This document shows positions 17,174 to 54,185 of a stretch of DNA of 64,000 nt, in pieces. The stretch lies in IMG/VR virus record IMGVR_UViG_3300023202_000383, positions 1 to 64,000 of that record; one strand, given 5' to 3'. Position numbers and translations under genes: made by a program. Within the stretch, counting starts at the first letter, position 1; every line of letters starts with the position of its first letter. A model generated the notes under the pieces. It ran no database searches and had not been told where the DNA came from. It worked only from the letters and a program-made list of their open reading frames with translations.

Positions 17174-17779
17174 CTACTTTAATCTAGACGCTTCTTGCTC
17201 AATGCTCTGATCACTCGTTTCTTGTTGTTCTTTCATTTCGCCTTTTTCTTTGTCGATTAGACGAACCACGTACTGAATGATATCGCGATACCACCATAAT
17301 TCATCCTCTGATACGTCATTCGACAAATGCTTGTCGATTTTCAATACTTCAGACTTGATTTCAGATAACAATCTCTTCGTTTCAATGTTCATTCTGATTC
17401 GTCCTGATTCGTCCTGTTCGTCCTGTTCGTCCTGTTCATCCTGTTCATCCTGTTCATCCTGTTCATCCTGTTCATCATCCTGTTGGTTTGTGGTCTCACG
17501 TTCGACCAATTCATCAATTTCAATTTCTTCAATGAGTTTATTAGCTCTGGCAAACCACTTTTTGACCGCAGATCGGCTTTCGGTAACAACAAAAAAATTA
17601 CCACAGGGGGTATGTATTGTTACACAATTAAAGCCAAACGGGGGGATGCAAGTGTCGCAGTCGATATGGATTTCGATTCCGTTTTCGTGAACCAACTGCA
17701 CGGTGTATAAATCGACGCGGTTTGATGTCCATCCCTTTGTTCTGGACATCAATTTCCACATCTTCGTTTCAATGTTCAT
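17174..17779 (-). CDS. hypothetical protein; two MNIETK-initiated modules joined by a (DEQ)n linker
   Basis: GAAGGA RBS before ATG 17779; second MNIETK start at 17392. Confidence 0.6.
   Translation of the reverse strand: MNIETKMWKLMSRTKGWTSNRVDLYTVQLVHENGIEIHIDCDTCIPPFGFNCVTIHTPCGNFFVVTESRSAVKKWFARANKLIEEIEIDELVERETTNQQDDEQDEQDEQDEQDEQDEQDEQDESGRIRMNIETKRLLSEIKSEVLKIDKHLSNDVSEDELWWYRDIIQYVVRLIDKEKGEMKEQQETSDQSIEQEASRLK
17409..17483. repeat. 9-bp tandem repeat TCRTCCTGT, 7 full units plus 1 imperfect
   Basis: Read directly from sequence; encodes a DEQ repeat on the minus strand. Confidence 0.95.
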
Positions 17780-23859: not shown

Positions 23860-24626
23860 AAAATCTTTTGGTAGCAAATTTCCAGCCTCCAGCCGATAGC
23901 GGTAACGATAAAAAGAAAGGTATGGACATAAATGGCTTAAAACTATTTATAAATGCTCAGATAGACAATAGCCTTCATTTAGGGTGGGACCCTAAAGACA
24001 TAATATTAGTCACAAATTTTATGCATCATTACAACGGCATAAATGCTTTTGTGACTAATTTAAACTCTAGTTGCCTGACTGGTAGCAAAATGTTTACTAT
24101 AAAATGGCTTTATGAAAACAATATAATAGATGATACGATATGGGCTCATGATTTAGATGCATGGCAGAATGATCCATTTTACGAGCCAGAATTTAAAGAT
24201 GTAGGAGTCTCAACATATAGCAGACCCAAATTCAACGGCGGTAGTATATTCATAAAACCGTCGGCCTTGGATATTATCAATGAAATAATAAATAATATAA
24301 TTACAAATAATGAAGATAGAGAAGAACCAACTATAAATGAAATTTTAAAATCAAATAAATACAAAGACAGAGTCACTGTACTAAATAACACGTATAATGT
24401 TGGGTGTTCTGGATATAAGGAGAGATACGAAAGAAGCAGCAAACCAATAAAAGTTTGCCATTTTAATCCACTAAATAGATTAGCATGGTGGACATTTGTT
24501 GGTGATAGACACAAATTAGGTCAAGCAGCCTCTGACAGATTAGCTTCTTTGTTGACCAAAAAATTCGGCAAGTATCAAAGCTTCAGAAGCGTGCCTTATA
24601 CTATGGATGAAAGAGATTTTAAATGA
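23856..24626 (+). CDS. nucleotide-diphospho-sugar transferase-like protein
   Basis: WAHDLDAW DxD motif, FNGGSIF, YNVG, CHF. Confidence 0.65.
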   Translation: MKNLLVANFQPPADSGNDKKKGMDINGLKLFINAQIDNSLHLGWDPKDIILVTNFMHHYNGINAFVTNLNSSCLTGSKMFTIKWLYENNIIDDTIWAHDLDAWQNDPFYEPEFKDVGVSTYSRPKFNGGSIFIKPSALDIINEIINNIITNNEDREEPTINEILKSNKYKDRVTVLNNTYNVGCSGYKERYERSSKPIKVCHFNPLNRLAWWTFVGDRHKLGQAASDRLASLLTKKFGKYQSFRSVPYTMDERDFK

Positions 24627-24741
24627 TTATCAGTAGTATAGTGATAAAAATATTAAGAAGACATTATTTTAATAAAATAATCAAAGACTTATTAGACACA
24701 AGATATGCAGAAGAAAGTTATGAATGTATTATACTTGAAGA

Positions 24742-24845
24742 AAAGTAGCAAAGTAGCAAAGTAGCAAAGTAGCAAAGTAGCAAAGTAGCAAAGTAGCAAA
24801 GTAGCAAAATAACACCAGAGCAAAATAACACCAGAGCAAAATAAC
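24742..24845. repeat. 8-bp-period array: (AAAGTAGC)x8 then (AAAATAACACCAGAGC)x2 plus a partial unit
   Basis: Read directly from sequence; intergenic. Confidence 0.95.
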
Positions 24846-24854
24846 AAGATTTGT

Positions 24855-25305
24855 AGATGGGAATCTCATATTGTCGGATCTGGTCCAGGCGAGATATGAG
24901 ATTGACTTTCCATCAGATTAATCCAGATCCCGCAAAGGTAGAGAACTACCTTCAGCGAAAATCCGATTGCTGAGAGAGCGCCCGGTAGGCTATTTCACCG
25001 GTCTAAGCCTACCATTCACCTTGGATAACCATTGGGTTACATGGCAAAAATGCAACAAGCAAAGCACAGTAACTCCCAGGAGAACACCCGCAGTCTCCGG
25101 CTCCGGGCCTAGCTATATCGGTTGGCACCCTGGGGATTAGAAACCAGGCTCTGTCATTACTAAATACCTACGCTGCTAGAAGCAGTGGGCAAAAGGGCCG
25201 AAATCGGGAAGGTTCCTGTCCATGGCAGCGTGAGAGTCAGACGTGATTAAAAAAGAAAAAGATGTTTCTCTCTTCGATTTTTCTTCTTCTTTTTTTTAAT
25301 CATCA
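24855..25305. ncRNA. candidate structured non-coding element (ncRNA or origin)
   Basis: No ORF of 60 aa or more; GC-enriched; several perfect inverted repeats (AATCTCATAT/ATATGAGATT, GGATCTGG/CCAGATCC, GGTAG/CTACC, GGTAGGCT/AGCCTACC, TAACC/GGTTA). Confidence 0.45.
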
Positions 25306-25363
25306 TGATCTCTCCAAGGTAAGGGAAACCGGACTATTTATAAATTATCAAATATAAAACGAC

Positions 25364-25585
25364 ATGTTTAAATGGCTTTTCGGCAGCAAGAAGCAAGAAA
25401 TGCATATCCATGTACATGTGGATGGTATTTTGAATGTTCAAGGTCAGGATTTAAAGCTTGGCATAAATTCGGATGCAGATATAAGCAACAATAAACAGGA
25501 TCCAAAAGAATCACACATACCTGAAATGGACCCGACAATTGGAGAAATTGACTTACCGCAGGTAGAATTTGGCGAAGAGGACTAA
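25364..25585 (+). CDS. small acidic protein with N-terminal amphipathic helix
   Basis: MFKWLFG start; preceded by the CAAATATA motif. Confidence 0.6.
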   Translation: MFKWLFGSKKQEMHIHVHVDGILNVQGQDLKLGINSDADISNNKQDPKESHIPEMDPTIGEIDLPQVEFGEED

Positions 25586-25586
25586 A

Positions 25587-26615
25587 ATGATTAAAATAGG
25601 ATTAGATCTTGGCACAAAGACAATCGTTTCTGCTAAAAGAGGCGAAGAAAACAAGCCTATATTCAAGCATGAAATAAATGGGTTTTATGAATTCCCGACA
25701 CCAGATAGCTTTACAAAAAAGCTGTTGGTTGGTCAGAAAATACCATTTGTTGAGAAGGATGGCAAGATATATGCTCTTGGCCGGAAGGCTGAGCAGTTTG
25801 CATATGCTGTCAATTCTACTCTTCGTAGACCGATGGCTGATGGTACAGTTAGCAAAGAGGAAGAAGCCATTAATATTATGGCATCGATTGTCCATGCTAT
25901 AATTGGCAAGTTAGATGATGATGCAATATTGTACTATTGTATCCCAGCAGACGCTATAAATAAGAGCACAAATGTGCAGTTCCACCAGAAGATTGCACAG
26001 ATGATAATTGATCGGTATCAAAGAAGTAAAGTAACTGTCAAGGGTTATCCTATCAATGAAGCCAGAGCGTTAGCTATAGGTTCTGGTGAGCCGGTTTGTA
26101 TTGCTGTGTCATTTGGTGCTGGTATGGTCAATGTTTGTTATTGCATGTACGGCATGTCAGTGTTTGAATTCAGTTTAGTTGGTAGCGGAGACCGGGTTGA
26201 TGCGGAGGCTGCTAGGCAGTTTGGATATGATCCAGAAAATCCAAATAAGAGCAGTCGCGAAACGCCGACAACCATGTGTAAGAGAAAGCACCAAATAGAT
26301 CTGACAAAATCTAAAGATGAAGTAGATAGAAAAGACCAGGCGATAATGATTTCGTATCAGATTCTGATAGAGAATGTTGTTGACGGTATTATAAAGGGTT
26401 TCAACGAAAACGAAGAAAAAGCCAAGATAGATCAGGCAATCCCTGTTGTAATAGCTGGTGGTACTTCATCTCCTCCGGGGTTCGGCGAATATTTTGAGGA
26501 GATTATGAAGTCTAAAGAACCCCCGTTTGAAATATCCACTATAACGGTACATCCTAGACCATTATATGCTGTTGCGGAAGGTTGTCTTATCGCTTCTGAG
26601 AGTCATGAGGAATAA
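25587..26615 (+). CDS. actin-fold ATPase (MreB/MamK/ParM superfamily)
   Basis: GLDLGT (phosphate 1), NEARA (connect 1), SFGAG (phosphate 2), IAGGTS (adenosine), PLYAVAEG (connect 2). Confidence 0.85.
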   Translation: MIKIGLDLGTKTIVSAKRGEENKPIFKHEINGFYEFPTPDSFTKKLLVGQKIPFVEKDGKIYALGRKAEQFAYAVNSTLRRPMADGTVSKEEEAINIMASIVHAIIGKLDDDAILYYCIPADAINKSTNVQFHQKIAQMIIDRYQRSKVTVKGYPINEARALAIGSGEPVCIAVSFGAGMVNVCYCMYGMSVFEFSLVGSGDRVDAEAARQFGYDPENPNKSSRETPTTMCKRKHQIDLTKSKDEVDRKDQAIMISYQILIENVVDGIIKGFNENEEKAKIDQAIPVVIAGGTSSPPGFGEYFEEIMKSKEPPFEISTITVHPRPLYAVAEGCLIASESHEE

Positions 26616-29232: not shown

Positions 29233-29991
29233 ATGGCTAGAGAGTTCTTTGATACTGTTGCTACTAAAGCTGGTTTGGCTGGCGAATATGAAGAACTAAT
29301 TGAGTCTGAATTCGCCGCCTCGGCTGGACCAGCGTATACGCCCGGCGAAGATGGAATTTTTAGGGTAGTTGCCTCTAGGACAATTCAGTTATTGAAGGGT
29401 AGTCCAATCTATGTGGAGACTTTTCAGGACTCTGCTGCCACCCTACGAGTTCCGTCTGGGCTAATAGCAAGCAATGATGCCAACGATGGTAGATTTTATT
29501 TTGTCAAGAACAGCGGAATTGGGAATGTTGCATTACAAGATCACTTAGGTGGATCTTTGGCGGCAATCCGTAAAGGTCAATTTGTTGTTGCCCTACATGG
29601 AGATGATGATAATTGGGATGCTTCTGGGTTGCTTAGTTCCGACGCCGTCGTCGAAGTCAAGAACACGTTGACGACCACGGACACACTGCTGAACACGATC
29701 GCCACGATCGACGTCGACCCCAGCACCGTACACCATCTGGACGTGACGATCACGGCGCGGGAGGGCGACAATAATAGAGGGTCGTTCGTGCGTAAGGCCA
29801 CGATTTACCGTAATTCGACGGGCGGGGCAGCAATCGAGAATAACGTAATCGTGGTATTTGACGAGAGCAGCAGCGGTAACTTTAAGATAGCTGTCGTGGC
29901 GAGCGGCAACAGCATACTCATTCAGGTTCAGGATGAGCAGGGGCAAACGGTGAACTGGACCAGTTGGCACAAACTCTACTCACAGGCGTGA
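29233..29991 (+). CDS. putative fibre/structural protein, chimeric (AT-rich 5' half, GC-rich 3' half)
   Basis: Codon composition switches abruptly near 29640 with no break in frame. Confidence 0.65.
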   Translation: MAREFFDTVATKAGLAGEYEELIESEFAASAGPAYTPGEDGIFRVVASRTIQLLKGSPIYVETFQDSAATLRVPSGLIASNDANDGRFYFVKNSGIGNVALQDHLGGSLAAIRKGQFVVALHGDDDNWDASGLLSSDAVVEVKNTLTTTDTLLNTIATIDVDPSTVHHLDVTITAREGDNNRGSFVRKATIYRNSTGGAAIENNVIVVFDESSSGNFKIAVVASGNSILIQVQDEQGQTVNWTSWHKLYSQA

Positions 29992-29992
29992 C

Positions 29993-30634
29993 ATGATTAC
30001 CGGCATCACACAATTCGGGTTGGAGGGGCGTGTAGCAACGGTGGATCACGACCCGGCTATCGTGTCGACCGATGTCCCCGCAGGTTCGATTATCCTGTCG
30101 ACCTCCACAGGATTGCTCTACCGAAAACTCACCGGCGGCAGCAACACGGATGTGTTGCCGATGACCGCTTCCAGTCAGCCGTTCGATTGGGACAGCGGGG
30201 CGTCGGCGGTCGCGGCGGTCGTCGCGGCCGGGATGCTGTCGCTCGAATTGCTTGCCGATACCGACTCGAAGGTAGTCGGCGGCGACGTTGCCCCGCTGCA
30301 CGTCGACCTCGATCAGGCGTTGGAGCTTGACGTCAAGATCGTCACCCTCAGCTTGGGCGACGCGTCGGCCGACGCGCACCTGCGGCTGACGGCCCGCTAC
30401 GTGGGGTTGGGCGAGGCGGCGGACAAGACGCCCGACGAGACGATCGACCACATCTTTGAAGTCGCCAACGTAGATAAGTGCGTGCACGCCGTGACGTTCA
30501 CACTGGACCCGTCGCTTATCTCCCCCGAAGACCTGCTAAACCTGGAGCTGTCGCGGCTGGGCACGTCAGCGAGTGACGTGTTTACCGGCTCCATCGGCGT
30601 TGCCGAGAGGTCGCTGCTGAGGTTCTTTAACTGA
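29993..30634 (+). CDS. putative structural (beta-rich) protein in GC island
   Basis: Coupled to neighbours; high GC3. Confidence 0.65.
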   Translation: MITGITQFGLEGRVATVDHDPAIVSTDVPAGSIILSTSTGLLYRKLTGGSNTDVLPMTASSQPFDWDSGASAVAAVVAAGMLSLELLADTDSKVVGGDVAPLHVDLDQALELDVKIVTLSLGDASADAHLRLTARYVGLGEAADKTPDETIDHIFEVANVDKCVHAVTFTLDPSLISPEDLLNLELSRLGTSASDVFTGSIGVAERSLLRFFN

Positions 30635-31164
30635 TGGCAAGCACGTACGAACTGATACTGTTCCGCGAGGAGACCCGAGACGACGGGAAGGTGGCGTTGC
30701 TGCGTATCCCGTTGGTGGCCGGTGCGGGGATCGACCTCGACGCGGTGATCGGGGAGGTATCCGCCGGTAGCGGTGTGAGCGTGCAGGAGGGATACGCCGA
30801 GAGCGAAGGGACCAGTTCGACGACCAGCACCAACTTTCAGCAAAAGCTCCGCGCCAGCTTGACGGGTCTAGACGCCGGTACGTATGAGGTGGCGTGGTCT
30901 TGTGAGGTGTTGCCCGGCAAAAACAATCTGGCTGCCCGCGTGCGGGTTCAAGTGGATGACACGACGACGCTAAACAGCCCTGACCCGGTCCTCAATCGAG
31001 ACAATAGCGGGGGCAACGTGAAGGGCTGGATGCCTCTCAGTGGGTTCCGTCAATTGGCATTGAGCGCCGGGGATCATGACTTCGACATCGACTTTGCTTC
31101 ACCTCAGAACGGAAAGTCAGTAGATATCCGGTTTGCGCGTATCAAAATAGCGAGGACAAATTAA
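30634..31164 (+). CDS. putative structural/fibre-tip protein in GC island
   Basis: TGATG coupling; beta-sandwich-like composition. Confidence 0.65.
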   Translation: MASTYELILFREETRDDGKVALLRIPLVAGAGIDLDAVIGEVSAGSGVSVQEGYAESEGTSSTTSTNFQQKLRASLTGLDAGTYEVAWSCEVLPGKNNLAARVRVQVDDTTTLNSPDPVLNRDNSGGNVKGWMPLSGFRQLALSAGDHDFDIDFASPQNGKSVDIRFARIKIARTN

Positions 31165-32106
31165 GTGGCCGAGCAAGCATACACGTACAGCATCGCCAGC
31201 GACTTCCCGTCGGGCGCGGTCAACACGCAGAAGCTGCACGACGAGGTCGTGGCCGACACGGCGATCACGACGCAGCTCGACCGCATCGACACCGACGGCG
31301 ACGGCTTGTCAATCGTGTTTCAGGCGGCGCTGTCGGCGGCGGAGAAGACGGCGCTGGACGGCGACACGACCGGACCGGCCGGGGGGCTGATCGCGCAGCA
31401 CGACAACAGCGCGTCCGCCCCCGACTACGGGAAGATGCAGATCGACGGGATCTCCCCGGACGCCAACGGCTCGCTGCCGCAGGCCCCGATCATCTCCACG
31501 CCGGGCCACCGGCTCAACGACCGCGACGTGCTGGTGCGGGTGGGCGAGTTCGACAACCCGTTCGAGGACCTGCGGGTCAACCCCGACGACAACAAGGAAG
31601 TGGCGTGGGGCGAGGTCACGTGCGACCCGGCCGACACCGATCCGGCGAACAAGACCGGGGTATTCAAGCTCGACGGCAACGGCGACTGGGTCCGCTGCAC
31701 CGACCAGACCGACGCGGCCGCCAACGCCGGGCTCACGGTCCTGGAGTACCAGGCCCGGCAGGGCGGCGTGGCCGGGGGCGATGCGCTCAAGTACGACGTG
31801 CGGGGCGGGACGCTGTGGGTCGACTCCAACGTGCCGGACGACGGCGACCGCTGGTCGCACCGCGTCTATTCGGTCGGTGCCCCGGACCTGTCGGCCGTCC
31901 TCGGCGGCCGGGTGCCGTTCTTCGACGGTTACCTGTTTCCCTATCGCAACAACTGGATGCAGACGCTCAATCCCGTGGCGTTCCCGATGGATCCGTCGGC
32001 GTCGGCGGCGGCGAGCATCGTCCGCGTGTGGTTCTATTACAAGGCGGGCACGGCGTACGAGCACGTGCTGCGGTTCCACCTGTACCGACCGACCGGAAGC
32101 TGGTAG
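31165..32106 (+). CDS. putative structural protein in GC island
   Basis: GTG start directly after the upstream stop; very high GC3. Confidence 0.7.
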   Translation: MAEQAYTYSIASDFPSGAVNTQKLHDEVVADTAITTQLDRIDTDGDGLSIVFQAALSAAEKTALDGDTTGPAGGLIAQHDNSASAPDYGKMQIDGISPDANGSLPQAPIISTPGHRLNDRDVLVRVGEFDNPFEDLRVNPDDNKEVAWGEVTCDPADTDPANKTGVFKLDGNGDWVRCTDQTDAAANAGLTVLEYQARQGGVAGGDALKYDVRGGTLWVDSNVPDDGDRWSHRVYSVGAPDLSAVLGGRVPFFDGYLFPYRNNWMQTLNPVAFPMDPSASAAASIVRVWFYYKAGTAYEHVLRFHLYRPTGSW

Positions 32107-32118
32107 GGTTTCCCATTC

Positions 32119-32190
32119 ATGAAGCTAATATTCTGCCCAGACTGCCGGGACGTGTTTAAGCTAGTCCGCGATGAGCCCCGTAAATGCTGA
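32119..32190 (+). pseudogene. truncated N-terminus of a small Zn-binding protein (MKLIFCPDCRDVFKLVRDEPRKC)
   Basis: CxxC...C start that stops at the island boundary. Confidence 0.5.
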
Positions 32191-32237
32191 GATTCTTGCT
32201 ATATCGAGACCCATCTGCTTAGTATTTGGATTAAGCT

Positions 32238-32888
32238 ATGGCTGACAAGATCAGTGTGCTTATGCCAACATATAATCGTGCGCACTTGATAGGTGTGTCT
32301 ATAAAGTCTATATTGTCCCAGACCCATAAAAATGTTGTTTTGTGCATCTATGATGATGGGTCTACTGACAATACAGAAGATGTCGTAAAATCATTTGGCG
32401 ATAACAGAATCATATATCATAAATCCGGAAAGAATTCTGGGTGTCCAGTTGCTAGAAATAAACTTCTTGAGATGGCCAATACTAGGTATGCTTGTTGGCA
32501 AGATAGTGATGATATCTCAAATAAGCATAGAATAAGAGAACAATTGAAGGCTATAAAGAAGTCGAAGGCGGCTATGGTTTGGTCTACGTTTAGGTGGTTT
32601 GACAAAGATATTGGCGATTCTTGGATGGAAGAACCAAAATCGCATAGTGGTACGGCTGCCCATGCTAGCATAATGTTTGAAGTATCTAAGGCCGTGCCAT
32701 TTAGATTGGTAAAAACTTTGGGTGGAGAAGATGCTAAGTGGCGTAGAGAAATAGAATCAGTTTATGGCAGGACGTTAAAAATCCCCAAAATATTGTATTA
32801 TGTAAGAAAGCACAATGATAGGATTGGGGTATGGAAGAAGAATCCTAAAGCCAATAAAGACTGGTACAACAGGATGGTCAAAAGATGA
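32238..32888 (+). CDS. glycosyltransferase family 2
   Basis: ISVLMPTYNR, YDDGSTD, WQDSDD. Confidence 0.92.
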   Translation: MADKISVLMPTYNRAHLIGVSIKSILSQTHKNVVLCIYDDGSTDNTEDVVKSFGDNRIIYHKSGKNSGCPVARNKLLEMANTRYACWQDSDDISNKHRIREQLKAIKKSKAAMVWSTFRWFDKDIGDSWMEEPKSHSGTAAHASIMFEVSKAVPFRLVKTLGGEDAKWRREIESVYGRTLKIPKILYYVRKHNDRIGVWKKNPKANKDWYNRMVKR

Positions 32889-35327: not shown

Positions 35328-35397
35328 AATAAAATATCTTTGATTACAGATAGATCCTCTGCATTGCGTGTTGTATTTTATATACATGGTTGACATA

Positions 35398-36747
35398 ATG
35401 AAATATAATGGTCCTACAGACTTTGCTCATCTTCATGTCCATACTTTATATAGTACGCTTGATGGGGTTCAATCTCCAGAAGAATTGTTTTCTACGTGCA
35501 AAGAAAGAGGATGGAGTGCGTTAGCCGTAACCGAGCATGGGACATTGGCATCAGTCCCAGACAATTATGCGGCTGCAAAAGAATACGGCGTAAAGTATAT
35601 AGTTGCTTGCGAAATTTATTACAATGATTATGAACCGACTAGGCAAGATCTTGTTAAAGAAGATGTTAAAATTCGCAAGCTAAAAGAAACCGACCCTAAT
35701 TTTTATTATAAAATGTCTAGAAATAGGCATTTAACAGTCCTTGCTAAAAACGATAAGGGTGTGGAGAACATAATAAAATTGACCACTCAAGCGTGGGAGA
35801 CTGGATTTTATTATAGGCCGAGGATATGGTTTGATAAATTAGATGAATATAGAGAGGGTTTATTGGTATTGAGTGGATGTTTAAATGGGCCTGTTTCTCA
35901 TGAGTTAAGACATGGGAATTTAAGGTCTGATGATATGAGAGGTGCATTAGACTATATACATAAATTCAAAGAAGTATTTGGCGATGATTATTTTGTAGAA
36001 TTGCAGATGCCTTGTCTTCCTGATTTTCCTGACCACAAAGTCTTCCGTGCATTAAATCATATAGCTAACAAGTACAATATACCGAAAGTTCTTACAAATG
36101 ACGCACATTATCTAAATCGTGAAGACTTTGAAATCCAGAAATTAATGATGGCTATATCCCAGGGTTTAACTGTTGATGATCCGAATCTGTTCCATGTAAA
36201 TAGTGATGAGCAATATCTTAAAACCAGAGCAGATCTATGGCACACATTTAAGACTGGGAAAGACGGCAAATATTGTGAATATGTGACTGATAGCGAATTT
36301 GAAGATATGTGCAACAACACATTGGTAGTTGCCGGTAAATGTGATAATTTCGAACCTGATTTGTCGTCGAAGGTTCCTACATTAGATAATGACGAGCAGA
36401 TCTTAAGAACCCTTGTGTACGATAGGCTTAAGCAAGAGGGATTCGATAAAGATGAAACTAAGTACAATATAGACAATAAAGAAGTTACTTATAGAGAACA
36501 AGCCGACATAGAATTGAATAGGTTTATTGAGAAGAATTTCGCCAGCTATTTCTTGATAACCAGAGATTTGGTGCAGTATAGTTTAGATAACGGTTGGCCT
36601 GTTGGACCGCGAGGTTCAGTTGGCGGCAGTCTAGTGTGTTATTTATTGGGCATAACCGAGTTGGATCCAATAAAATGGAATTTATCGTTTAACAGGTTTT
36701 TAAGCCCCTCGCGCGGAGGAAAGATGCTAAACATTAAGGCAGAATAG
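35398..36747 (+). CDS. dnaE: DNA polymerase III alpha, fragment 1 (PHP domain + N-terminal palm)
   Basis: HLHVHTLYSTLDG, TEHG, NDAHY, YFLIT, GPRGSVGGSLV, RFLSPSR, then stop. Confidence 0.9.
   Translation: MKYNGPTDFAHLHVHTLYSTLDGVQSPEELFSTCKERGWSALAVTEHGTLASVPDNYAAAKEYGVKYIVACEIYYNDYEPTRQDLVKEDVKIRKLKETDPNFYYKMSRNRHLTVLAKNDKGVENIIKLTTQAWETGFYYRPRIWFDKLDEYREGLLVLSGCLNGPVSHELRHGNLRSDDMRGALDYIHKFKEVFGDDYFVELQMPCLPDFPDHKVFRALNHIANKYNIPKVLTNDAHYLNREDFEIQKLMMAISQGLTVDDPNLFHVNSDEQYLKTRADLWHTFKTGKDGKYCEYVTDSEFEDMCNNTLVVAGKCDNFEPDLSSKVPTLDNDEQILRTLVYDRLKQEGFDKDETKYNIDNKEVTYREQADIELNRFIEKNFASYFLITRDLVQYSLDNGWPVGPRGSVGGSLVCYLLGITELDPIKWNLSFNRFLSPSRGGKMLNIKAE
36728..36746 (+). repeat. direct repeat flanking the inserted endonuclease gene (partner at 38604-38628)
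   Basis: TAAACATTAAGGCAGAATA here; the partner reads TAAACATTAAG-ATTAAG-GCAGAATA. Confidence 0.85.
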
Positions 36748-39015: not shown

Positions 39016-39496
39016 TAAAATAGACATATATTGCTTTGCTAGAGGCAAGGATAGTCCATACGCATATGGCATCCTTGTGGTCGCACATTATGGCGAAGAG
39101 TGTAAAGAGCACGAGAAATTTGGTTTCGTAGATGCGAAAACGCCTACTGAGGCCAATATCAAGATAATATTGATGGCGTTGAAGTCCGTTAAAGATGACT
39201 TTAAGGACCTCGATATCACTCTTCATGTAAGAAAATCTGCATTTTATTGTGTTGATAGAACATCTTGGGGAACCTATAGAACAAAGCCAACCAGACATCA
39301 TAAACTGATAGGTGCGGTGAGAAGTTTGTTTGACGAGCTTCCTAATGCAAGATCAAAGATGATATTCTCCAAATACCAAAAGTATGCTAAAAGATGTATA
39401 AAAAAGTCTAGGAGCATGTTTCATGCGAAACGACGCGAGTTGGGACGATATAAAGGTGATAGCGGTCAAGGAGCTCGTCCAGAAAAAGCTACCTAA
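39005..39496 (+). CDS. RNase HI-fold protein, catalytic acidic residues lost
   Basis: IDIYCFA (for IYTDG), YGILV, TPTEANIKIILMAL, ITLHVRKS (for TDS). Confidence 0.5.
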   Translation: MAPDKIDIYCFARGKDSPYAYGILVVAHYGEECKEHEKFGFVDAKTPTEANIKIILMALKSVKDDFKDLDITLHVRKSAFYCVDRTSWGTYRTKPTRHHKLIGAVRSLFDELPNARSKMIFSKYQKYAKRCIKKSRSMFHAKRRELGRYKGDSGQGARPEKAT

Positions 39497-41192
39497 CGAG
39501 TATAAGTCTAGATTTAAGACAGAAATAAAAGAGATCGAAAAGCAAGGTGCCAATGCCTATTGGCAGCAGCTATATAACGAAGATCACAAATACGACACGA
39601 ATAACAATGGTTTGGTCTTGCCCTGGATATTAGGCATGACCGATGTTGATCCTTTAAAATCAGACCATCAATATACAAGGTCGACGGACTGGCCTGACAT
39701 AGATGTTGACTGCTTACCGACAGCCAGAGATAGGATCAAAGAATATGCTGCAGAGAAATATGGCAAAGACAAAGTCTGTAGCGTAGGGTTGTGGCAGACA
39801 TATAAATTTAGGTCAGCATTACAAGACTCTGTTAGAGGTGTTGGTGGTAATGTCAAAGAAATCATGGACATCACTAAGCAGTTGCCGGATGATGTTGACG
39901 ATCTGAAAGATGGTGGTTTTGCAAAGTGCACTGAATGTAAAACGAAGCATAATGAGCATAAATGCCCAGAATGTGGATCAACAGAAATAGATGGGATCAC
40001 ATTTGGGAAGGTGATAGAAGATCATGAAGAATTAAAGAAATATTATGGAGAGCATCCTAAAGAAGTCAATCTAGCCGTTAGAATGATAGGAAAAATAAAA
40101 GCGCTGGGTAAACACGCTGGCGGCCTTATTATATCTGATAGAGTGCTATTCGGAAATGTCCCTATGGGCGTTTCAAATGGCCATTGGACAAGTTTGTGGA
40201 CTGAAGGCAGGAGTACTCAATTATCTAAATTCGGGTATATTAAGTGGGATATGCTTGGCCTTAAAACTTTGCAGTATATTCATGAGTGCTGCAAATTAAT
40301 CAATAAAACCAGAAATTACAAGTTTAATGTTATTCCATGGAAAGGAATGGACCCATGGGAAAACTGTCTTGGATACTATTGGGATAATAATGGCGTAAAA
40401 CACAAAGTGAGGATGGATGACGAAAAAACCTTTGAGATGATGAACGCCATAAGGACCGATACAGTATTCCAATTCGACACGGCACTGCAGAAGAAGATTT
40501 TAGAAAATGGCGTAAACAGCTTTTATGATTTACAGATATTTAATGCAATGGGCCACCCAGGTCCGTTGCCAATGATCGATGAGTATGTAGCTCGACGTGA
40601 CAATGAGGACTACGATTGGAAGAGCGAGGAGCATCCTGATGTTGCATCGTTGCTTAAAGACACAAAGGGTATCATAGTATATCAGGAGCAATTGCAGAAG
40701 ATCTGGCAACATTTGGCTAAATTCACGGCTCCCGAAGCTGAATCTGCGAGGAAGGCTGTTGCTAAGAAATGGACGGAAAAACTAAAGCCTGTTGAGGAGA
40801 AGTGGGTAAGGGGCGCATCTAAGATAATGGGCGAGCGGCGGGCTAAAGATTACTGGGGGAAGATGAAAACTTTCGGTAGGTATGCCTTCAATAAATGCCT
40901 GGACAAAGATACTATATTAGAAGATCCTACAAATGGCAATACTATAACTGTTGAAGAGCTTTTTGAATCTAAATCGAGCTTTAAATTAGAATCTTATTGT
41001 GATGATGGATTTGTGGTCGATGACGTTGATGAGATAATCGAATGCGGTGAACAAGATATTTATGAAATAGAATTAGATAATGGGGCGATTCAGAAAGTCA
41101 CTTTGAATCATAAGTTTAGGTGCGATGATGGAAAATACTGGACAGTCAAAGAAATCATCGAAGGCAATTATTCCATCGTGGTTCGACCATAA
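39423..41192 (+). CDS. dnaE: DNA polymerase III alpha, fragment 2 (catalytic palm/fingers) fused to N-half of split intein (40896-41189)
   Basis: WPDIDVDC, GKHAGG, IKWDMLGLKTL, IVYQEQ, YAFNK|CLDKDT...KVTLNHKF. Confidence 0.9.
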   Translation: MRNDASWDDIKVIAVKELVQKKLPNEYKSRFKTEIKEIEKQGANAYWQQLYNEDHKYDTNNNGLVLPWILGMTDVDPLKSDHQYTRSTDWPDIDVDCLPTARDRIKEYAAEKYGKDKVCSVGLWQTYKFRSALQDSVRGVGGNVKEIMDITKQLPDDVDDLKDGGFAKCTECKTKHNEHKCPECGSTEIDGITFGKVIEDHEELKKYYGEHPKEVNLAVRMIGKIKALGKHAGGLIISDRVLFGNVPMGVSNGHWTSLWTEGRSTQLSKFGYIKWDMLGLKTLQYIHECCKLINKTRNYKFNVIPWKGMDPWENCLGYYWDNNGVKHKVRMDDEKTFEMMNAIRTDTVFQFDTALQKKILENGVNSFYDLQIFNAMGHPGPLPMIDEYVARRDNEDYDWKSEEHPDVASLLKDTKGIIVYQEQLQKIWQHLAKFTAPEAESARKAVAKKWTEKLKPVEEKWVRGASKIMGERRAKDYWGKMKTFGRYAFNKCLDKDTILEDPTNGNTITVEELFESKSSFKLESYCDDGFVVDDVDEIIECGEQDIYEIELDNGAIQKVTLNHKFRCDDGKYWTVKEIIEGNYSIVVRP

Positions 41193-45993: not shown

Positions 45994-46803
45994 ATGGAAA
46001 AAAGATGCATATTTAGTGGTAGCACTGAGAATTTAAATACTTCTATGAACATAATTGTTGATGGTGAAACAGTGACGTGTTTTATATCTGATGAATATGC
46101 AGAAGACGCTACAATAAAGAGTGTCAAGGAGGCATACGCAGCCAGGCAGCATAAAATAGAAGAGCTCAAAAGACAAGCCGAGGAATTGGGCATTGTTATA
46201 GGTGATGATGCTGCACAGAAGCAAGCTGGTATGCAGCCACAGCAGCCACAGCAGCCACAGCAGCCACAGCAGCCACAGCAGCCACAGCAGTCACAGCAGT
46301 CACAGCAGCCACAGCAGCCACAGCAGCCACAGCAGCCACAGCAGCCAGAAGTCGATCAAACAGGTATGGTCGATGCGAAGGTGGCCGATGGTAATTTAAT
46401 TGATCTATCTAAAGTAAAATCCACATCAAATGTTGGTGGCCCGCAATCTCAATATGCCATAGAGTCTATAACAGAAGCGTCTGAAGATTTAAAAGAAGGC
46501 GAGAAGGCTAGGATTCAGAATGTTGAAGCTCGGAAGGGGTTAAATGTCCCGATACCAGTGGAGAGAGTTGGCAAGACTGGCACTACTAGAGTTAAGATTT
46601 CTAAATATTCAGATGCTGAATTGCAGAATAGATTTAAAAAGATGGCAGATGCTACTCAGAGCGATCAATTTGAAGGATATAGCAGATCATATGAGGTCAG
46701 GCTATCTAAGTGCCCATTGTGTAGAGGTAGTGGGACGGTTAAGAATAGCCAGGTGTGCCCAAAATGTGGCGGTGCTGGCGAGATAGAAGTGCATCAATTT
46801 TAA
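45994..46803 (+). CDS. hypothetical protein with QQP repeat and C-terminal DnaJ-type zinc finger
   Basis: CPLCRGSG...CPKCGGAG. Confidence 0.75.
   Translation: MEKRCIFSGSTENLNTSMNIIVDGETVTCFISDEYAEDATIKSVKEAYAARQHKIEELKRQAEELGIVIGDDAAQKQAGMQPQQPQQPQQPQQPQQPQQSQQSQQPQQPQQPQQPQQPEVDQTGMVDAKVADGNLIDLSKVKSTSNVGGPQSQYAIESITEASEDLKEGEKARIQNVEARKGLNVPIPVERVGKTGTTRVKISKYSDAELQNRFKKMADATQSDQFEGYSRSYEVRLSKCPLCRGSGTVKNSQVCPKCGGAGEIEVHQF
46234..46347 (+). repeat. 9-bp tandem repeat CAGYCACAG x12 plus partial (QPQ/QSQ)
   Basis: Read directly from sequence. Confidence 0.95.
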
Positions 46804-47575: not shown

Positions 47576-49741
47576 ATGTCAGGAGGCAACATGGCTAAAG
47601 GCAAAAAAGAAAGCAAGACAGACTATTCGAACATGGACATAGACAGTCTGATGAGTAGTCTTAACAAGAAATATGGTGAGGGGTCTGTGCAGAAGTATGA
47701 TAGGGCCGCAATAGTGTCGTGCGATACTATAAGCACTGGCGTGGCCACTTTAGATGATGCTTTGCATATTGGCGGAGTACCTAAAGGGCGGGTAATAGAA
47801 ATCTATGGCCCCGAATCTGGCGGCAAGACTACTCTATCTCTGTCTATCGTAGCCGAATGCCAGGCTGCCGGTGGGACAGCGGCATTTATTGATGCTGAGC
47901 ACGCGTTGGATGTTCAGTGGGCGCACGACATTGGTGTTGATGTAGAATCATTGCTGATAAGCCAGCCGGATTCTGGCGAGCAGGCGTTGGAAATCTGCGA
48001 AGCTATGGTTAGATCGAACAAGTTTGGTATTATAGTGGTTGATTCGGTTGCAGCCCTTGTTCCTAAAGCCGAAATTGATGGTGAAATGGGCGATGCCCAT
48101 GTTGGTCTGCAGGCCAGGATGATTAGTCAGGGTATGAGAAAGCTATCTGGTGCAGTTAAGACCAGCAATACATGCTTGGTATTTATTAATCAGCTTCGCG
48201 AGAAGATCGGCGTGATGTTTGGGTGTTTACATGCTGACAATCTTATAAATTTTTCGGATGGCAAGTCGGCCACAATAAAAGACGTTGTTGATAATAAAAT
48301 CAAAGGATCAGTATGGTCTTATGATGAGGAATTAGACGAATTTTGTGAATGCCAGATTACTGATTGGCATTTCAATGGTGAAGTCAGTAATCCAGAGGAT
48401 TATTTATCTATTTCAATAAAAGGATCTGGTAATAAAAATGGGCGAATGAATATAATTGTGACGCCCGACCACGATGTGCTTACTGATTATGGCTGGGTTC
48501 GGGCAACCGATCTGGATATCGGAGACAAATTAATAACCAAGCAGCAAGATGTTATGTGTGGTGATTTAGGAAATTTTCTTAGAGGGACATTGTCTGGCGA
48601 TTCGCATATATCTCAAGCGGATGGGCACCTGTGTGCAAGTTTGAAAATCAGGGATAATATTGATATTAATTATGCAAAATGGAAGGCAAATAAGTTGTCT
48701 GCAATCAGTATGACCAAAAAGACTTATGGTAAATATGATATATATACTTCTGGGCAATTTTCTCAATTTGTTGACATAAAAGAAGATTTCCCAAACAGGG
48801 ACCCTATGCTTTTGTTGAGTAGTTTTAGTTGGCTTGGTTTTGCTATATGGATAATGGATGATGCTTGTTATAATAGAAGTAGATATGTTTTGTCTATTAA
48901 AAGGCTAAAAGGCGACCATAAAAAGATCGATGAAATTAGTAAGACACTAGACGACCTAGGCTTATATCATCATTCTAGTTATGGCGGGAAAATCACGTTC
49001 GACAAAGACATATCTGATATGATTGCCCATAAGATAGCCAAATATGTTCCTATATGTATGCGTCATAAATTACCAAATGACGTTGAATTAGATAATTATT
49101 GCGAATTTGAATTGAAGAATTCAACGAAGCAGTGCAAGACTTATGCAGAGGTTGTTGATATACGTACCGCAAGCAATAGACAAATGAAAAATGTCGGAAA
49201 ATATGATATTTCAGTGGACAGATGCCACAATTATTCCGTTGGTGGGAGACATAATGGCGTTATTGTGCACAATTCGCCCGAAACAACGCCTGGCGGTAGG
49301 GCACTGAAATTCTATGCATCAGTTAGGCTAGATGTTAGACGTACTGGAATAGAAAAAGACGGCGATACGCCGATTGGAAGTAAGGTTAGGGTAAAAGTTG
49401 TTAAGAACAAAGTGGCTCCGCCATTCTCGCAGGCTGAATTTGTTATATACTATGGCAAAGACGAGATGCCAGTATATGGTCCTGATAAGTTCGGATCCAT
49501 CTTAGATATGGCGGTAGATAAGGATATTGTTGGTAAAAGCGGGTCGTGGTATGAGTATAATGGCGATAAAATAGGGAATGGTAGGACTAACGCTGTAAGA
49601 TTCTTACAGGATTCTGATTCAGTGTCTGAGGAAATCAAAGCTAAATTGGCCGATCTTAGGAAAGCGCGTGTTGCTGAGGTCAATGAGGCCGATGAAGTTG
49701 ATGAAATCAAAGACGAAGACACAGAATCGGAAGGTGATTGA
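47576..49741 (+). CDS. recA: RecA recombinase with intein
   Basis: [46 protein letters not shown]|...|[14 protein letters not shown]. Confidence 0.95.
48224..49273 (+). mobile_element. 350-aa intein with LAGLIDADG-type endonuclease in RecA
   Basis: Starts CLHAD, block [15 protein letters not shown] and AIWIMDDA helices, ends IVHN before Ser. Confidence 0.92.
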
Positions 49742-53985: not shown

Positions 53986-54185
53986 TTAGTAGAAGAAAAA
54001 GAAAAGAACTTAGAAGAAAGAGAAGAAAAGACAAGAAGAAGACAACAGAACAAAAAGACACAAAGAGCACAAAAGCAACAGAGCAAAAAGCAAAAGAGCA
54101 AAAGAGCAAAAGAACAAAAGAGCAAAAGAGCAACTTCGACAAAAGAGCATGGGGCGTAAAAAATGGCAAAGAGGCAGATACCTAA
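53982..54185 (+). CDS. small K/R-rich protein built on an 8-bp repeat
   Basis: ATGA-coupled to polA; overlaps the start of the next gene. Confidence 0.45.
   Translation: MISRRKRKELRRKRRKDKKKTTEQKDTKSTKATEQKAKEQKSKRTKEQKSNFDKRAWGVKNGKEADT
54091..54147 (+). repeat. 8-bp tandem repeat CAAAAGAR x5 plus 1
   Basis: Read directly; degenerate units extend upstream to about 54050. Confidence 0.9.

What the first reader, a model, noticed from the sequence alone, without database searches (positions are those of the whole stretch)
24855..25305. Hairpin-dense non-coding stretch of about 450 bp, with a possible pseudoknot
Seen: the longest ORF-free gap in the window, locally GC-rich. A long stem (GATGGGAATCTCATAT...ATATGAGATTGACTTTCCATC) has GGATCTGG in its loop, complementary to CCAGATCC just downstream, which is pseudoknot geometry. 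Further stems are GGTAG/CTACC, TCAGC/GCTGA, GGTAGGCT/AGCCTACC, TAACC/GGTTA, TCCCAGG/CCTGGGG and a terminal A-tract/T-tract stem at about 25245-25302. I did not recognise tRNA, tmRNA, RNase P or group I/II intron cores. Inference: an undescribed large phage ncRNA, or a structured replication origin or packaging signal.
Basis: partly seen in the sequence, partly recalled or inferred. Interest (0 to 1): 0.7.

Follow-up and report, generated by a model that had tools for sequence, protein, structure and literature searches.

The report
New structured RNA before phage actin operon
The non-coding stretch encodes a real, roughly 490-base folded RNA of a family not in Rfam, found in nine related giant-phage genomes and always at the head of an operon that encodes a small conserved protein, normally followed by an actin-like protein; what it does is not known.

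Summary
Window 24627-25363 is by far the longest ORF-free gap, and its centre is GC-rich (0.45-0.52 against 0.27-0.38 in the flanks). It is not a known RNA: no hit among 4227 Rfam families, and no tRNA or tmRNA. Eight other jumbo-phage contigs carry a homologous core. On the nine sequences, 88% of cells pair, against 64% in shuffles. 29 of 35 pairs change on both sides, and the covariation score is 0.65 against 0.22 in shuffles and 0.09 or less when partners are slid. G-U pairs and GNRA loops favour the + strand.

A new long helix (24963-24971 with 25111-25121) and a different, long-range pseudoknot (25018-25025 with 25313-25320) are supported. The A/T hairpin is internal, not a terminator. 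The element runs on to a conserved 17-nt motif at 25321-25337.

The RNA always points into an operon that starts with or contains a 72-95 aa protein (HIHVHV...PEVEFG), usually followed by a Volactin-family actin. No terminator lies in between. My best reading is a cis-acting leader whose pseudoknot couples a sensor fold to the 3' motif (about 0.4). A stand-alone ncRNA is the main rival. Transcription could not be tested.

The parts
24742..24846 (.). Two perfect tandem arrays (AAAGTAGC x8.4, then a 16-mer x2.8) that abut the 5' edge of the RNA. It is uncertain whether they belong to the element.
   Evidence: Four of nine homologs have strong arrays of unrelated sequence abutting the RNA (window, L003, L105, L096).
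24856..24952 (+). Variable 5' domain. It holds a long hairpin (24856-24914, core arms 24862-71 with 24894-903) and a small hairpin (24935-41 with 24946-52). Both are specific to this sequence.
   Evidence: The 5' parts of the homologs differ in sequence and length, so there is no comparative support.
24958..24962 (+). Conserved single-stranded GAAAU ahead of helix H0.
   Evidence: Alignments A7 and A9.
24963..24971 (+). H0 5' strand (CCGAU, U, GCU). It pairs with 25111-25121.
   Evidence: 6-8 bp in every homolog. Seven of eight modelled pairs change on both sides, and 96-100% of cells pair. RNAalifold recovers it independently.
24972..24976 (+). Conserved 5-nt purine-rich bulge GAYAG (GAGAG here) between H0 and Ha.
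   Evidence: Columns 20-24 of A9. RNAalifold pairs the flanking AG with CU (columns 25-26 with 320-321), and these pairs are invariant.
24977..24984 (+). Ha 5' strand (AG, bulged C, GCCCG). It pairs with 25104-25110.
   Evidence: Mostly invariant, with one compensatory C-G to A-U change in L089.
24985..25012 (+). Hairpin Hb (GUAGGCU with AGCCUAC).
   Evidence: 5 of 5 modelled pairs change on both sides, and 100% of cells pair., I7.
25018..25025 (+). Pseudoknot 5' strand ACCUUGGA, in the junction between Hb and Hc.
   Evidence: Perfect 8-mer complement to 25313-25320 (I8). The equivalent pairing lies at the same offset after Hb (4-10 nt) in L003, L172, L089, L176 and L105, with different sequences.
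25026..25039 (+). Optional small hairpin (UAACC with GGUUA).
   Evidence: A hairpin at this place in L089 (GAAA loop), L105 (GCAA) and L002 (ACAA); absent in L003.
25076..25100 (+). Hairpin Hc (GGAGA 25079-83 with UCUCC 25094-98, flanked by CC and GG).
   Evidence: 6 of 6 modelled pairs change on both sides, and 83% of cells pair.
25104..25121 (+). 3' strands of Ha (CGGGC-CU, 25104-25110) and H0 (AGC, UAU, AUCGG, 25111-25121).
25123..25156 (+). Hairpin He'/He. Outer stem UGGCA with UGUCA, inner stem CCUGG 25129-33 with CCAGG 25144-48, loop GGAUUAGAAA.
   Evidence: 10 of 11 modelled pairs change on both sides, and 69-80% of cells pair. The loop sequence is shared only with L003 and L089.
25157..25243 (+). 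3' domain with further hairpins (for example CUGCU 25173-77 with AGCAG 25181-85). A CCGAAA(G/U) motif is shared with L003, L172 and L089.
   Evidence: Aligned by eye only, not counted.
25244..25302 (+). AU-rich terminal hairpin (A-tract with U-tract). It is internal to the fold, not a terminator.
   Evidence: I1 and I2. Hairpins of other sequence sit at the same place in L003, L089 and L172. The terminator scan finds none here.
25313..25320 (+). Pseudoknot 3' strand UCCAAGGU.
25321..25337 (+). Conserved 3' motif AAGGGAAACCGGACUAU. It occurs once in the 256-kb record.
   Evidence: Recognisable by eye in L003, L089, L105, L172, L176, L168 and, weakly, L096. No second copy in the genome at up to 2-3 mismatches. 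A related motif sits before the small-protein gene in L173 and L175, which lack the core.
25364..25585 (+). Downstream gene for a 73-aa protein (N-terminal MxxWL, HIHVHVDG, disordered middle, C-terminal PxVEFG). It has no Shine-Dalgarno sequence.
   Evidence: In L168 this gene and the RNA are inverted together relative to the actin gene.
25587..26615 (+). Actin-like protein (Pfam Volactin, E = 6e-49).

Best explanation
The stretch is the template of a roughly 490-nt structured RNA on the + strand (about 24850-25337), from a family that is not in Rfam.

The fold:
- A long helix (H0 plus Ha), interrupted by a conserved GAYAG bulge, closes a multi-way junction that carries hairpins Hb and Hc.
- A second hairpin (He) follows, then a variable 3' domain that ends in an AU-rich hairpin.
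- A strand of the junction pairs about 290 nt downstream with the segment just before a conserved 17-nt motif. This pseudoknot ties the 3' end to the core.

Most likely function: the RNA is the 5' leader of the operon that follows (small HIHVHV...PEVEFG protein, then the actin-like protein) and acts in cis. The folded core would bind a protein or a small molecule. Forming or losing the pseudoknot would then change the accessibility of the 3' motif and of the AU-rich, Shine-Dalgarno-less start region of the small-protein gene, and so set the operon's translation or stability.

Shown: the conserved fold, the strand preference, the synteny, and the absence of a consensus terminator.

Inferred: transcription, co-transcription with the operon, the ligand, and the regulatory outcome.
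For: Real and structured:
- Covariance models built from 4-5 sequences find 9 distinct homologs at 25-171 bits.
- 88.1% of cells pair against 63.7% in shuffles. 29 of 35 pairs change on both sides. The covariation score is 0.648, against 0.222 in shuffles (0 of 500 reach it) and 0.088 or less when partners are slid.
- RNAalifold recovers H0, Ha, Hb, Hc and He on its own, with 22 of 30 pairs compensatory.

Strand: 23 G-U cells against 9 A-C cells. GNRA loops read correctly only on the + strand.

Not coding: there is no peptide-level similarity between homologous regions.

Pseudoknot: a perfect 8 bp in the window. There are 5-7 bp of different sequence at the same offset in five homologs. Three of the six have 2-4% of shuffles reaching the observed length.

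Leader reading:
- The RNA has the same orientation as the next gene in every case that can be judged.
- The 3' motif ends 5-70 nt before the next start codon.
- No terminator-like site lies between the RNA and the ORF.
- In L168 the RNA and the small-protein gene are inverted together relative to the actin gene.
- The small-protein genes lack a Shine-Dalgarno sequence, although GGAG and AGGA are enriched 4-5 fold before ORFs of this genome.
- L173 and L175 lack the core but keep a related motif before the same gene.
Against: - No transcript evidence: no RNA run was listed.
- No promoter was identified upstream of the RNA. The sigma-70 scan is at chance level.
- At 400-490 nt it is far larger than known cis-regulatory leaders.
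- In L003, L089 and L168 one or two other genes lie between the RNA and the small-protein gene.
- Close relatives with the same operon lack the core (L167, L169, L171, L173, L174, L175), so the operon can work without it.
- The terminator scan detects only GC-rich stems followed by a T-run.
- The alignments used for the counts were fitted to the model's structure, which inflates the percentage paired.
Confidence: 0.42

Rival explanations
1. It is a stand-alone, stable, trans-acting ncRNA: a scaffold, RNP component or ribozyme, in the manner of the large ornate phage-associated RNAs GOLLD and ROOL. It would be transcribed ahead of the operon or cut out of its transcript. The 3' motif would be a processing or protein-binding site.
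For: - The size and ornate multi-domain fold, with a conserved bulge and pseudoknot.
- One copy per genome.
- It occurs in either orientation relative to the actin gene (L096 and L168).
- Patchy presence among close relatives, as for accessory ncRNA genes.
- The genome carries 35 tRNA genes, so it invests in RNA machinery.
Against: - No terminator-like 3' end and no recognisable promoter of its own.
- Constant orientation towards, and closeness to, the next gene's start.
- It is not near the tRNA arrays (129-207 kb), where GOLLD and ROOL tend to sit (own knowledge).
- No similarity to GOLLD, ROOL, OLE, HEARO or raiA in Rfam.
Confidence: 0.3
2. It is a DNA-level element of the actin cassette or of replication. 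That could be a centromere or operator like parC, alpS or parN upstream of an actin-type segregation operon, or an origin whose hairpins form in single-stranded DNA or in a primer transcript.
For: - Centromeres of actin-type partition systems lie directly upstream of their operons and consist of direct repeats (established knowledge: R1 parC, pLS32 parN, CGP3 alpS).
- Perfect tandem arrays abut the element in four of nine homologs.
- The 3' motif occurs twice, 60-70 bp apart, in L105 and L175.
- There is an AT-rich segment at 25244-25302.
- DNA-replication genes are neighbours, and the GC-skew minimum lies only about 5-7 kb away.
Against: - The repeats differ in sequence and are absent from L176 and L168.
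- What is conserved is pairing, not sequence, and it includes a 290-nt-range pseudoknot, G-U wobble and GNRA loops. A double-stranded binding site does not need any of these.
- The GC-skew minimum is not at the locus.
- No RNase H gene (PF00075) in this record.
- The small protein has no ribbon-helix-helix pattern after its beta-strand motif (judged by eye).
Confidence: 0.12
3. It is a very divergent member of a known RNA family, such as RNase P RNA for the 35 phage tRNAs, tmRNA, a cobalamin-type riboswitch, or a group I or II intron.
For: - Superficial resemblances only: GGUGAAAUCC (as in the cobalamin L5 region), ACAGAGAG (as in RNase P J11/12), and GAAACCGGACUAU (as in RNase P CR-V).
- The genome has many tRNA genes.
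Against: - No Rfam match even at E = 10 or below, on the window region and on six homolog loci.
- ARAGORN finds no tmRNA in the whole record.
- The partner of the GAAAUCC segment is the H0 3' strand. It is not a P4-type 3' strand or a kissing loop.
- There are no flanking exons.
Confidence: 0.03
4. It is a decayed protein gene or non-functional spacer whose stems arise by chance.
For: Short ORFs of 38 and 57 aa lie inside it. Individual short complements are expected by chance.
Against: - No peptide-level similarity among homologs.
- Indels are not in threes.
- Covariation is far above both controls.
- It is conserved across phages whose actin proteins are only 50-66% identical.
Confidence: 0.02

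Closest known systems
GOLLD and ROOL: large ornate RNAs of phages and prophages (Rfam; PMC5737381; bioRxiv 10.1101/2024.12.08.627333)
   Same: They are several hundred nucleotides long, have multi-domain covarying folds, are carried by phage genomes, have no known function, and were found by comparative analysis of GC-rich intergenic DNA.
   Different: There is no sequence or structure match. This RNA is smaller. It is not next to tRNA genes. It is fixed at the head of one particular operon and has no terminator of its own.
Phage T4 gene 32 mRNA leader (a pseudoknot operator followed by an unstructured A/U-rich run up to the start codon; own knowledge)
   Same: A pseudoknot lies just upstream of an AU-rich region without a Shine-Dalgarno sequence that leads into the first gene. 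The operon encodes a protein that polymerises. The setting is a phage DNA-metabolism region.
   Different: The T4 operator is a small local pseudoknot of about 30 nt. Here the pseudoknot spans about 290 nt and locks a 3-way-junction core. Binding by the operon's own proteins is untested.
Pseudoknotted riboswitches (SAM-II, preQ1-II, fluoride; own knowledge)
   Same: It lies upstream of the gene on the same strand. The 3' strand of a pseudoknot lies next to the expression region. The junction nucleotides are conserved.
   Different: It is 3-8 times larger. No ligand is known. It precedes a single gene context instead of a regulon. The purine-rich motif lies too far (27-45 nt in most) from the start codon to serve as its Shine-Dalgarno sequence.
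parC, parN and alpS centromere-operator regions upstream of actin-type (ParM, AlfA, AlpC) operons (own knowledge)
   Same: It lies directly upstream of an operon that encodes an actin-like protein and a small partner protein. Direct repeat arrays are present in several members.
   Different: Those are double-stranded DNA repeat arrays of 100-200 bp with no RNA fold. Here the conserved feature is base pairing, and the repeats are neither conserved nor always present.

Membership tests
Any Rfam 15 family (including RNase P, tmRNA, SRP, 6S, GOLLD, ROOL, OLE, HEARO, raiA, riboswitches, group I/II introns) | A covariance-model score at or above the family's gathering threshold | tested here: not met
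   No matches in the 64-kb window. At E = 10 or below on 24600-25450, the only hits are to the A/T hairpin and one 24-nt CRISPR-repeat-like hit, all far below threshold. Nothing falls on the RNA in six homolog loci.
tRNA / tmRNA | A cloverleaf or tRNA-like domain, with a tag reading frame for tmRNA | tested here: not met
   ARAGORN finds none in the window and no tmRNA in the 256-kb record.
RNase P RNA | A P4 helix between the GGAAAGUCC-like 5' strand and a 3' strand next to P1 | tested here: not met
   The segment after GAAAU pairs with the strand that follows Ha (helix H0, covarying). It does not pair with the 3'-terminal motif.
Structured non-coding RNA (generic) | Base pairs kept through compensatory changes across homologs, above the controls | tested here: met
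Structured non-coding RNA (generic) | Transcribed as RNA | not testable with these tools
   No RNA run was listed. The DNA runs show only identical sequence.
Cis-regulatory leader / riboswitch | Lies in the 5' untranslated region, on the same strand as the regulated gene and directly before it | tested here: met
   The orientation and closeness hold in all loci that can be judged, including the inverted L168. Whether it is really part of the mRNA is unknown.
Cis-regulatory leader / riboswitch | An expression platform: a terminator/antiterminator, or sequestration of the ribosome-binding site | tested here: inconclusive
   No terminator-like site. The pseudoknot 3' strand abuts a conserved motif, but that motif is not at Shine-Dalgarno distance from the start codon.
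Cis-regulatory leader / riboswitch | Specific binding of a ligand or protein | not testable with these tools
   This needs in-line probing or binding assays.
Type II (actin-type) partition centromere | An array of direct repeats upstream of the operon, conserved as a feature among relatives | tested here: inconclusive
   Strong arrays in four of nine homologs, of unrelated sequence, and none in L176 or L168.
Type II (actin-type) partition centromere | Bound by the operon's small adaptor protein | not tested
   No binding prediction was run. The small protein has a C-terminal PxVEFG motif and no evident DNA-binding fold.
Replication origin | Coincides with the GC-skew switch or strand switch | tested here: not met
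   The cumulative GC-skew minimum is at about 18-20 kb, and the record is only about 70% complete.

The most novel reading that the evidence does not exclude
The RNA is not merely a regulator. It is a working partner of the phage's actin-like cytoskeleton: an RNA 'centromere', nucleator or cargo tag that is bound by the small HIHVHV...PEVEFG protein. That protein's C-terminal peptide would in turn dock onto the actin filament. This would explain why the RNA and the small-protein gene stay together even when they are inverted relative to the actin gene.
Probability: 0.07. Interest if true: 0.9.

Novelty: categorically new. Interest (0 to 1): 0.66.

Why it matters
Large, intricately folded RNAs without a known job are rare, and each one found so far has opened new biology. 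This one is specific to a clade of jumbo phages and is tied to an operon for an actin-like protein, a part of phage cell biology that is barely explored. It has a compact, well-defined core: one helix with a conserved bulge, a three-way junction and a long-range pseudoknot. That makes it suitable for probing, ligand screens and cryo-EM.

If it is a leader, it would be an unusually large cis-regulator of a viral cytoskeletal operon. If it is a free RNA, it adds a new class to the short list of ornate phage RNAs.

'Categorically new' refers here to the RNA family. No relation to any described family was found. The mechanism may still turn out to be a known type.

Tried and rejected
- **Rfam.** Searched at gathering and at E = 10 or below, on the window and on six homolog loci. 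Nothing.
- **Public phage records.** blastn found no match.
- **Pattern scans.** The 5' block in IMG/VR found only known members plus chance hits; L163 scored 21 bits with R1 and was lost with R2. The scan of 185,579 prokaryote species genomes gave 66 hits, all 18 bits or less with R1, which is the chance level. Two more IMG/VR patterns found nothing real.
- **More distant jumbo-phage records.** R1 on five records, two of them complete, found no match.
- **RNA-seq.** No run was listed. Laying DNA contigs gave no variants.
- **Pseudoknot GAAAUCC with loop GGAUU.** Considered and rejected. It appears only in the three closest sequences, and the CC is taken by H0.
- **Terminal helix P1 joining the 5' and 3' ends.** Complements exist, but they are no better than shuffles and are not at a fixed place. 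It was dropped in favour of the junction pseudoknot.
- **The 3' motif as a general phage promoter.** It occurs only once in the genome. A -35/-10 reading is possible, but its spacing would be 15-18 nt and the '-35' covaries as a helix strand.
- **ColE1-like primer RNA cut by RNase H.** An RNase H gene is adjacent in some relatives, but there is none in this record.
- **Bacteroidota-type promoter (TAnnTTTG) at the 5' edge.** The genome uses Shine-Dalgarno sites, and the motif is only about twofold enriched, from a few per cent.
- **Relatives without the core.** Their non-coding gaps (L174, L175, L167 and others) share no second RNA family, apart from a 27-nt motif shared by L173 and L175.
- **Not run.** Structure and complex predictions for the small protein. 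I make no binding claim.

Full report
**Setting.** The window is the first 64 kb of a 256.5-kb IMG/VR virus record, estimated about 70% complete. The gene content is that of a jumbo phage:
- a split DnaE;
- RecA carrying an intein;
- SbcCD-like proteins, a DEAD_2 helicase, a Mom-like protein and many glycosyltransferases;
- 35 tRNA genes further along the record.

Relatives of the neighbouring actin gene sit on contigs of 340-408 kb, one of them with terminal repeats.

**The observation.** Window 24627-25363 (737 nt) is by far the longest stretch without an ORF of 60 aa or more; the next is 227 nt. GC rises to 0.44-0.52 over 24800-25300, against 0.27-0.38 on either side. The + strand folds better than all 100 shuffles (z = -2.6). 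The - strand folds almost as well (z = -2.1). Inverted 8-mers are about ninefold in excess over shuffles, partly because of the A/T tracts.

**Not a known RNA.** Rfam 15 gives no hit at gathering thresholds in the whole window. At E = 10 or below it gives only noise on the A/T hairpin. ARAGORN finds no tRNA or tmRNA in the window. Six homologous loci also give nothing on the RNA. Public phage records hold no similar DNA.

**Homologs.** The gene two places downstream encodes a Volactin-family actin (Pfam E = 6e-49). I collected its relatives' loci from IMG/VR, JGI metagenomes and Logan/ENA contigs. nhmmer first linked the window's gap to a GC-rich, ORF-free island upstream of the actin gene in L003, and then to L089, L105 and L002.

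A covariance model of the core (R1), and a second one with one more helix (R2), find nine distinct members:
- window 24953-25161;
- L003 (171 bits), L089 (162), L172 (151), L105 (144);
- L176 (49), L002 (49);
- L096 (29) and L168 (25), both on the strand opposite to the actin gene.

Pattern-selected chance hits score 18 bits or less, and one 21-bit hit, L163, disappeared with R2. There is one copy in the window's own record. R1 finds nothing in five more distant jumbo-phage records, two of them complete. Neither model finds the core in the fetched flanks of several equally close relatives: L167, L169, L171, L173, L174, L175, L082 and L084.

**The fold.** Reading from the 5' end of the conserved core:
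- GAAAU.
- Helix H0. In the window it is 24963-71 with 25111-21.
- A conserved 5-nt bulge GAYAG.
- Helix Ha: AG and GCCCG with CGGGC-CU.
- A junction that carries hairpin Hb (24985-25012), an optional small hairpin, and hairpin Hc (25076-25100).
- After H0 closes, hairpin He'/He (25123-25156).

On the nine sequences, 88.1% of cells pair (shuffles 63.7 ± 2.0). 29 of 35 pairs change on both sides. The covariation score is 0.648, against 0.222 in shuffles (0 of 500 reach it) and 0.088 or less with partners slid by 1-3 columns. H0 and Hb are the clearest, at 96-100% paired with nearly every pair compensated. H0 is also fully paired in four of the five rows of a plain MAFFT alignment that was not fitted to any structure; the window row uses a register shifted by one base. 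RNAalifold recovers H0, Ha, Hb, Hc and He by itself.

G-U cells outnumber A-C cells 23 to 9, and the small hairpins carry GAAA and GCAA loops on the + strand. Both favour a + strand RNA. One caveat: the counted alignments were fitted to the model, which favours its structure.

**A different pseudoknot.** The window holds a perfect 8-mer complement between 25018-25025 (ACCUUGGA, in the junction just after Hb) and 25313-25320 (I8). The same two places pair in five homologs, with different sequences:

| Locus | Junction strand | 3' strand |
|---|---|---|
| L003 | GCGCAGG | CCUGCGC |
| L172 | GCGCAAG | CUUGCGC |
| L089 | UUGCAG | CUGCAA |
| L176 | CGCAUG | CAUGCG |
| L105 | CGUGG | UCACG |

The junction strand always lies 4-10 nt after Hb, and the 3' strand lies 1-10 nt (1-6 nt in five of six) before the 3' motif. 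In three of the six, only 2-4% of shuffles reach the observed length. The helix crosses H0 and Ha, so it is a true pseudoknot.

It follows that the AU-rich hairpin 25244-25302 is internal to the fold, and that the RNA reaches at least 25320. It can be neither supported nor excluded.

**The 3' motif.** AAGGGAAACCGGACUAU (25321-25337) follows the pseudoknot directly. It is recognisable in L003, L089, L105, L172, L176, L168 and, weakly, L096. It occurs once in the 256-kb record, so it is not a general promoter. L173 and L175 lack the core but have a related motif just before the same downstream gene. L105 and L175 carry two copies.

**Context.** The next gene (25364-25585) encodes a 73-aa protein with three conserved parts: an N-terminal MxxWL, an HIHVHVDG strand, and a C-terminal PxVEFG peptide. 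It lies directly before the actin gene in many relatives, including distant ones.

The RNA points into the operon that contains this gene in every locus that can be judged. In L003, L089 and L168 one or two other genes intervene. In L168 the RNA and the small-protein gene lie together on the strand opposite to the actin gene. No terminator-like site separates the RNA from the ORF, and the sigma-70 scan is at chance level. The small-protein genes lack a Shine-Dalgarno sequence, although such sites are 4-5 fold enriched before ORFs of this genome. Perfect tandem arrays of unrelated sequence abut the RNA in four of nine members.

**Not coding, not an origin.** Six-frame peptides from the window's region find nothing in the homologous regions; the best E-value is 0.11. 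The cumulative GC-skew minimum, which coincides with the strand switch of the genes, lies at 18-20 kb. There is no RNase H gene in this record, although one sits next to the gap in some relatives.

**Interpretation.** That this is a real, structured and previously undescribed RNA I hold at about 0.9. Its role is inferred.
- **Cis-acting leader, about 0.4.** The fixed orientation and closeness to the next start codon, the missing terminator, the pseudoknot that ends at a conserved motif ahead of an AU-rich start region without a Shine-Dalgarno sequence, and the joint inversion with the small-protein gene fit this best. It works like a very large pseudoknotted riboswitch, or like the phage T4 gene 32 operator.
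- **Free, stable ncRNA of the GOLLD/ROOL kind, about 0.3.** This is the main rival.
- **DNA-level centromere or origin, about 0.1.**

No RNA-seq run could be found, and the three DNA runs that hold the sequence show no variation. Transcription and RNA ends therefore remain the decisive missing data.

Noticed in passing
window 29526-32251: A stretch in which 200-nt windows reach GC 0.74, in a genome of 41% GC. Its four ORFs (252, 213, 176 and 313 aa) have no Pfam match. It is possibly recently acquired DNA.
   Followed up: partly
window 25364-25585, and homologs in L003, L089, L105, L167-L176: A small protein of 72-95 aa is conserved directly before the phage actin gene. It has an N-terminal MxxWL, an HIHVHVxG strand, a variable middle and a C-terminal (L/I)PxVxFG peptide, and no Pfam or PHROG match. 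It looks like an adaptor for the actin-like protein.
   Followed up: partly
window 24742-24846; L003 944-1012; L105 3164-3284; L096 88-147: Perfect or near-perfect tandem arrays of unrelated sequence abut the RNA in four of nine members. In L096 the array lies on the RNA's 3' side. This is unexplained. They could be protein-binding iterons or slippage hot spots.
   Followed up: partly
L173 7630-7752; L175 4660-4719: Two relatives without the RNA core share a 27-nt motif (UUGGGGUAAAGrGAUmAGAGUAkAU) just before the small-protein gene. It resembles the window's 3' motif. In L173 a perfect 13-bp hairpin precedes it.
   Followed up: partly
window 47576-49741: RecA is interrupted by an intein with a LAGLIDADG endonuclease domain.
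   Followed up: no
window 35368-36747 and 39423-41192: DNA polymerase III alpha is encoded in two separate ORFs (PHP plus N-terminal part, then fingers). A Mom-like gene and others lie between them.
   Followed up: no
G000:C1 129258-154108 and 196366-206979: There are 35 tRNA genes in two clusters, including one with anticodon UUA (it would read UAA) and one with an odd anticodon loop. There is no tmRNA.
   Followed up: no
window 17386-17476, 46233-46347, 54053-54133: Further near-perfect short-period tandem arrays (9-mer x9.9, 9-mer x12.8, 8-mer x10), some of them inside ORFs.
   Followed up: no
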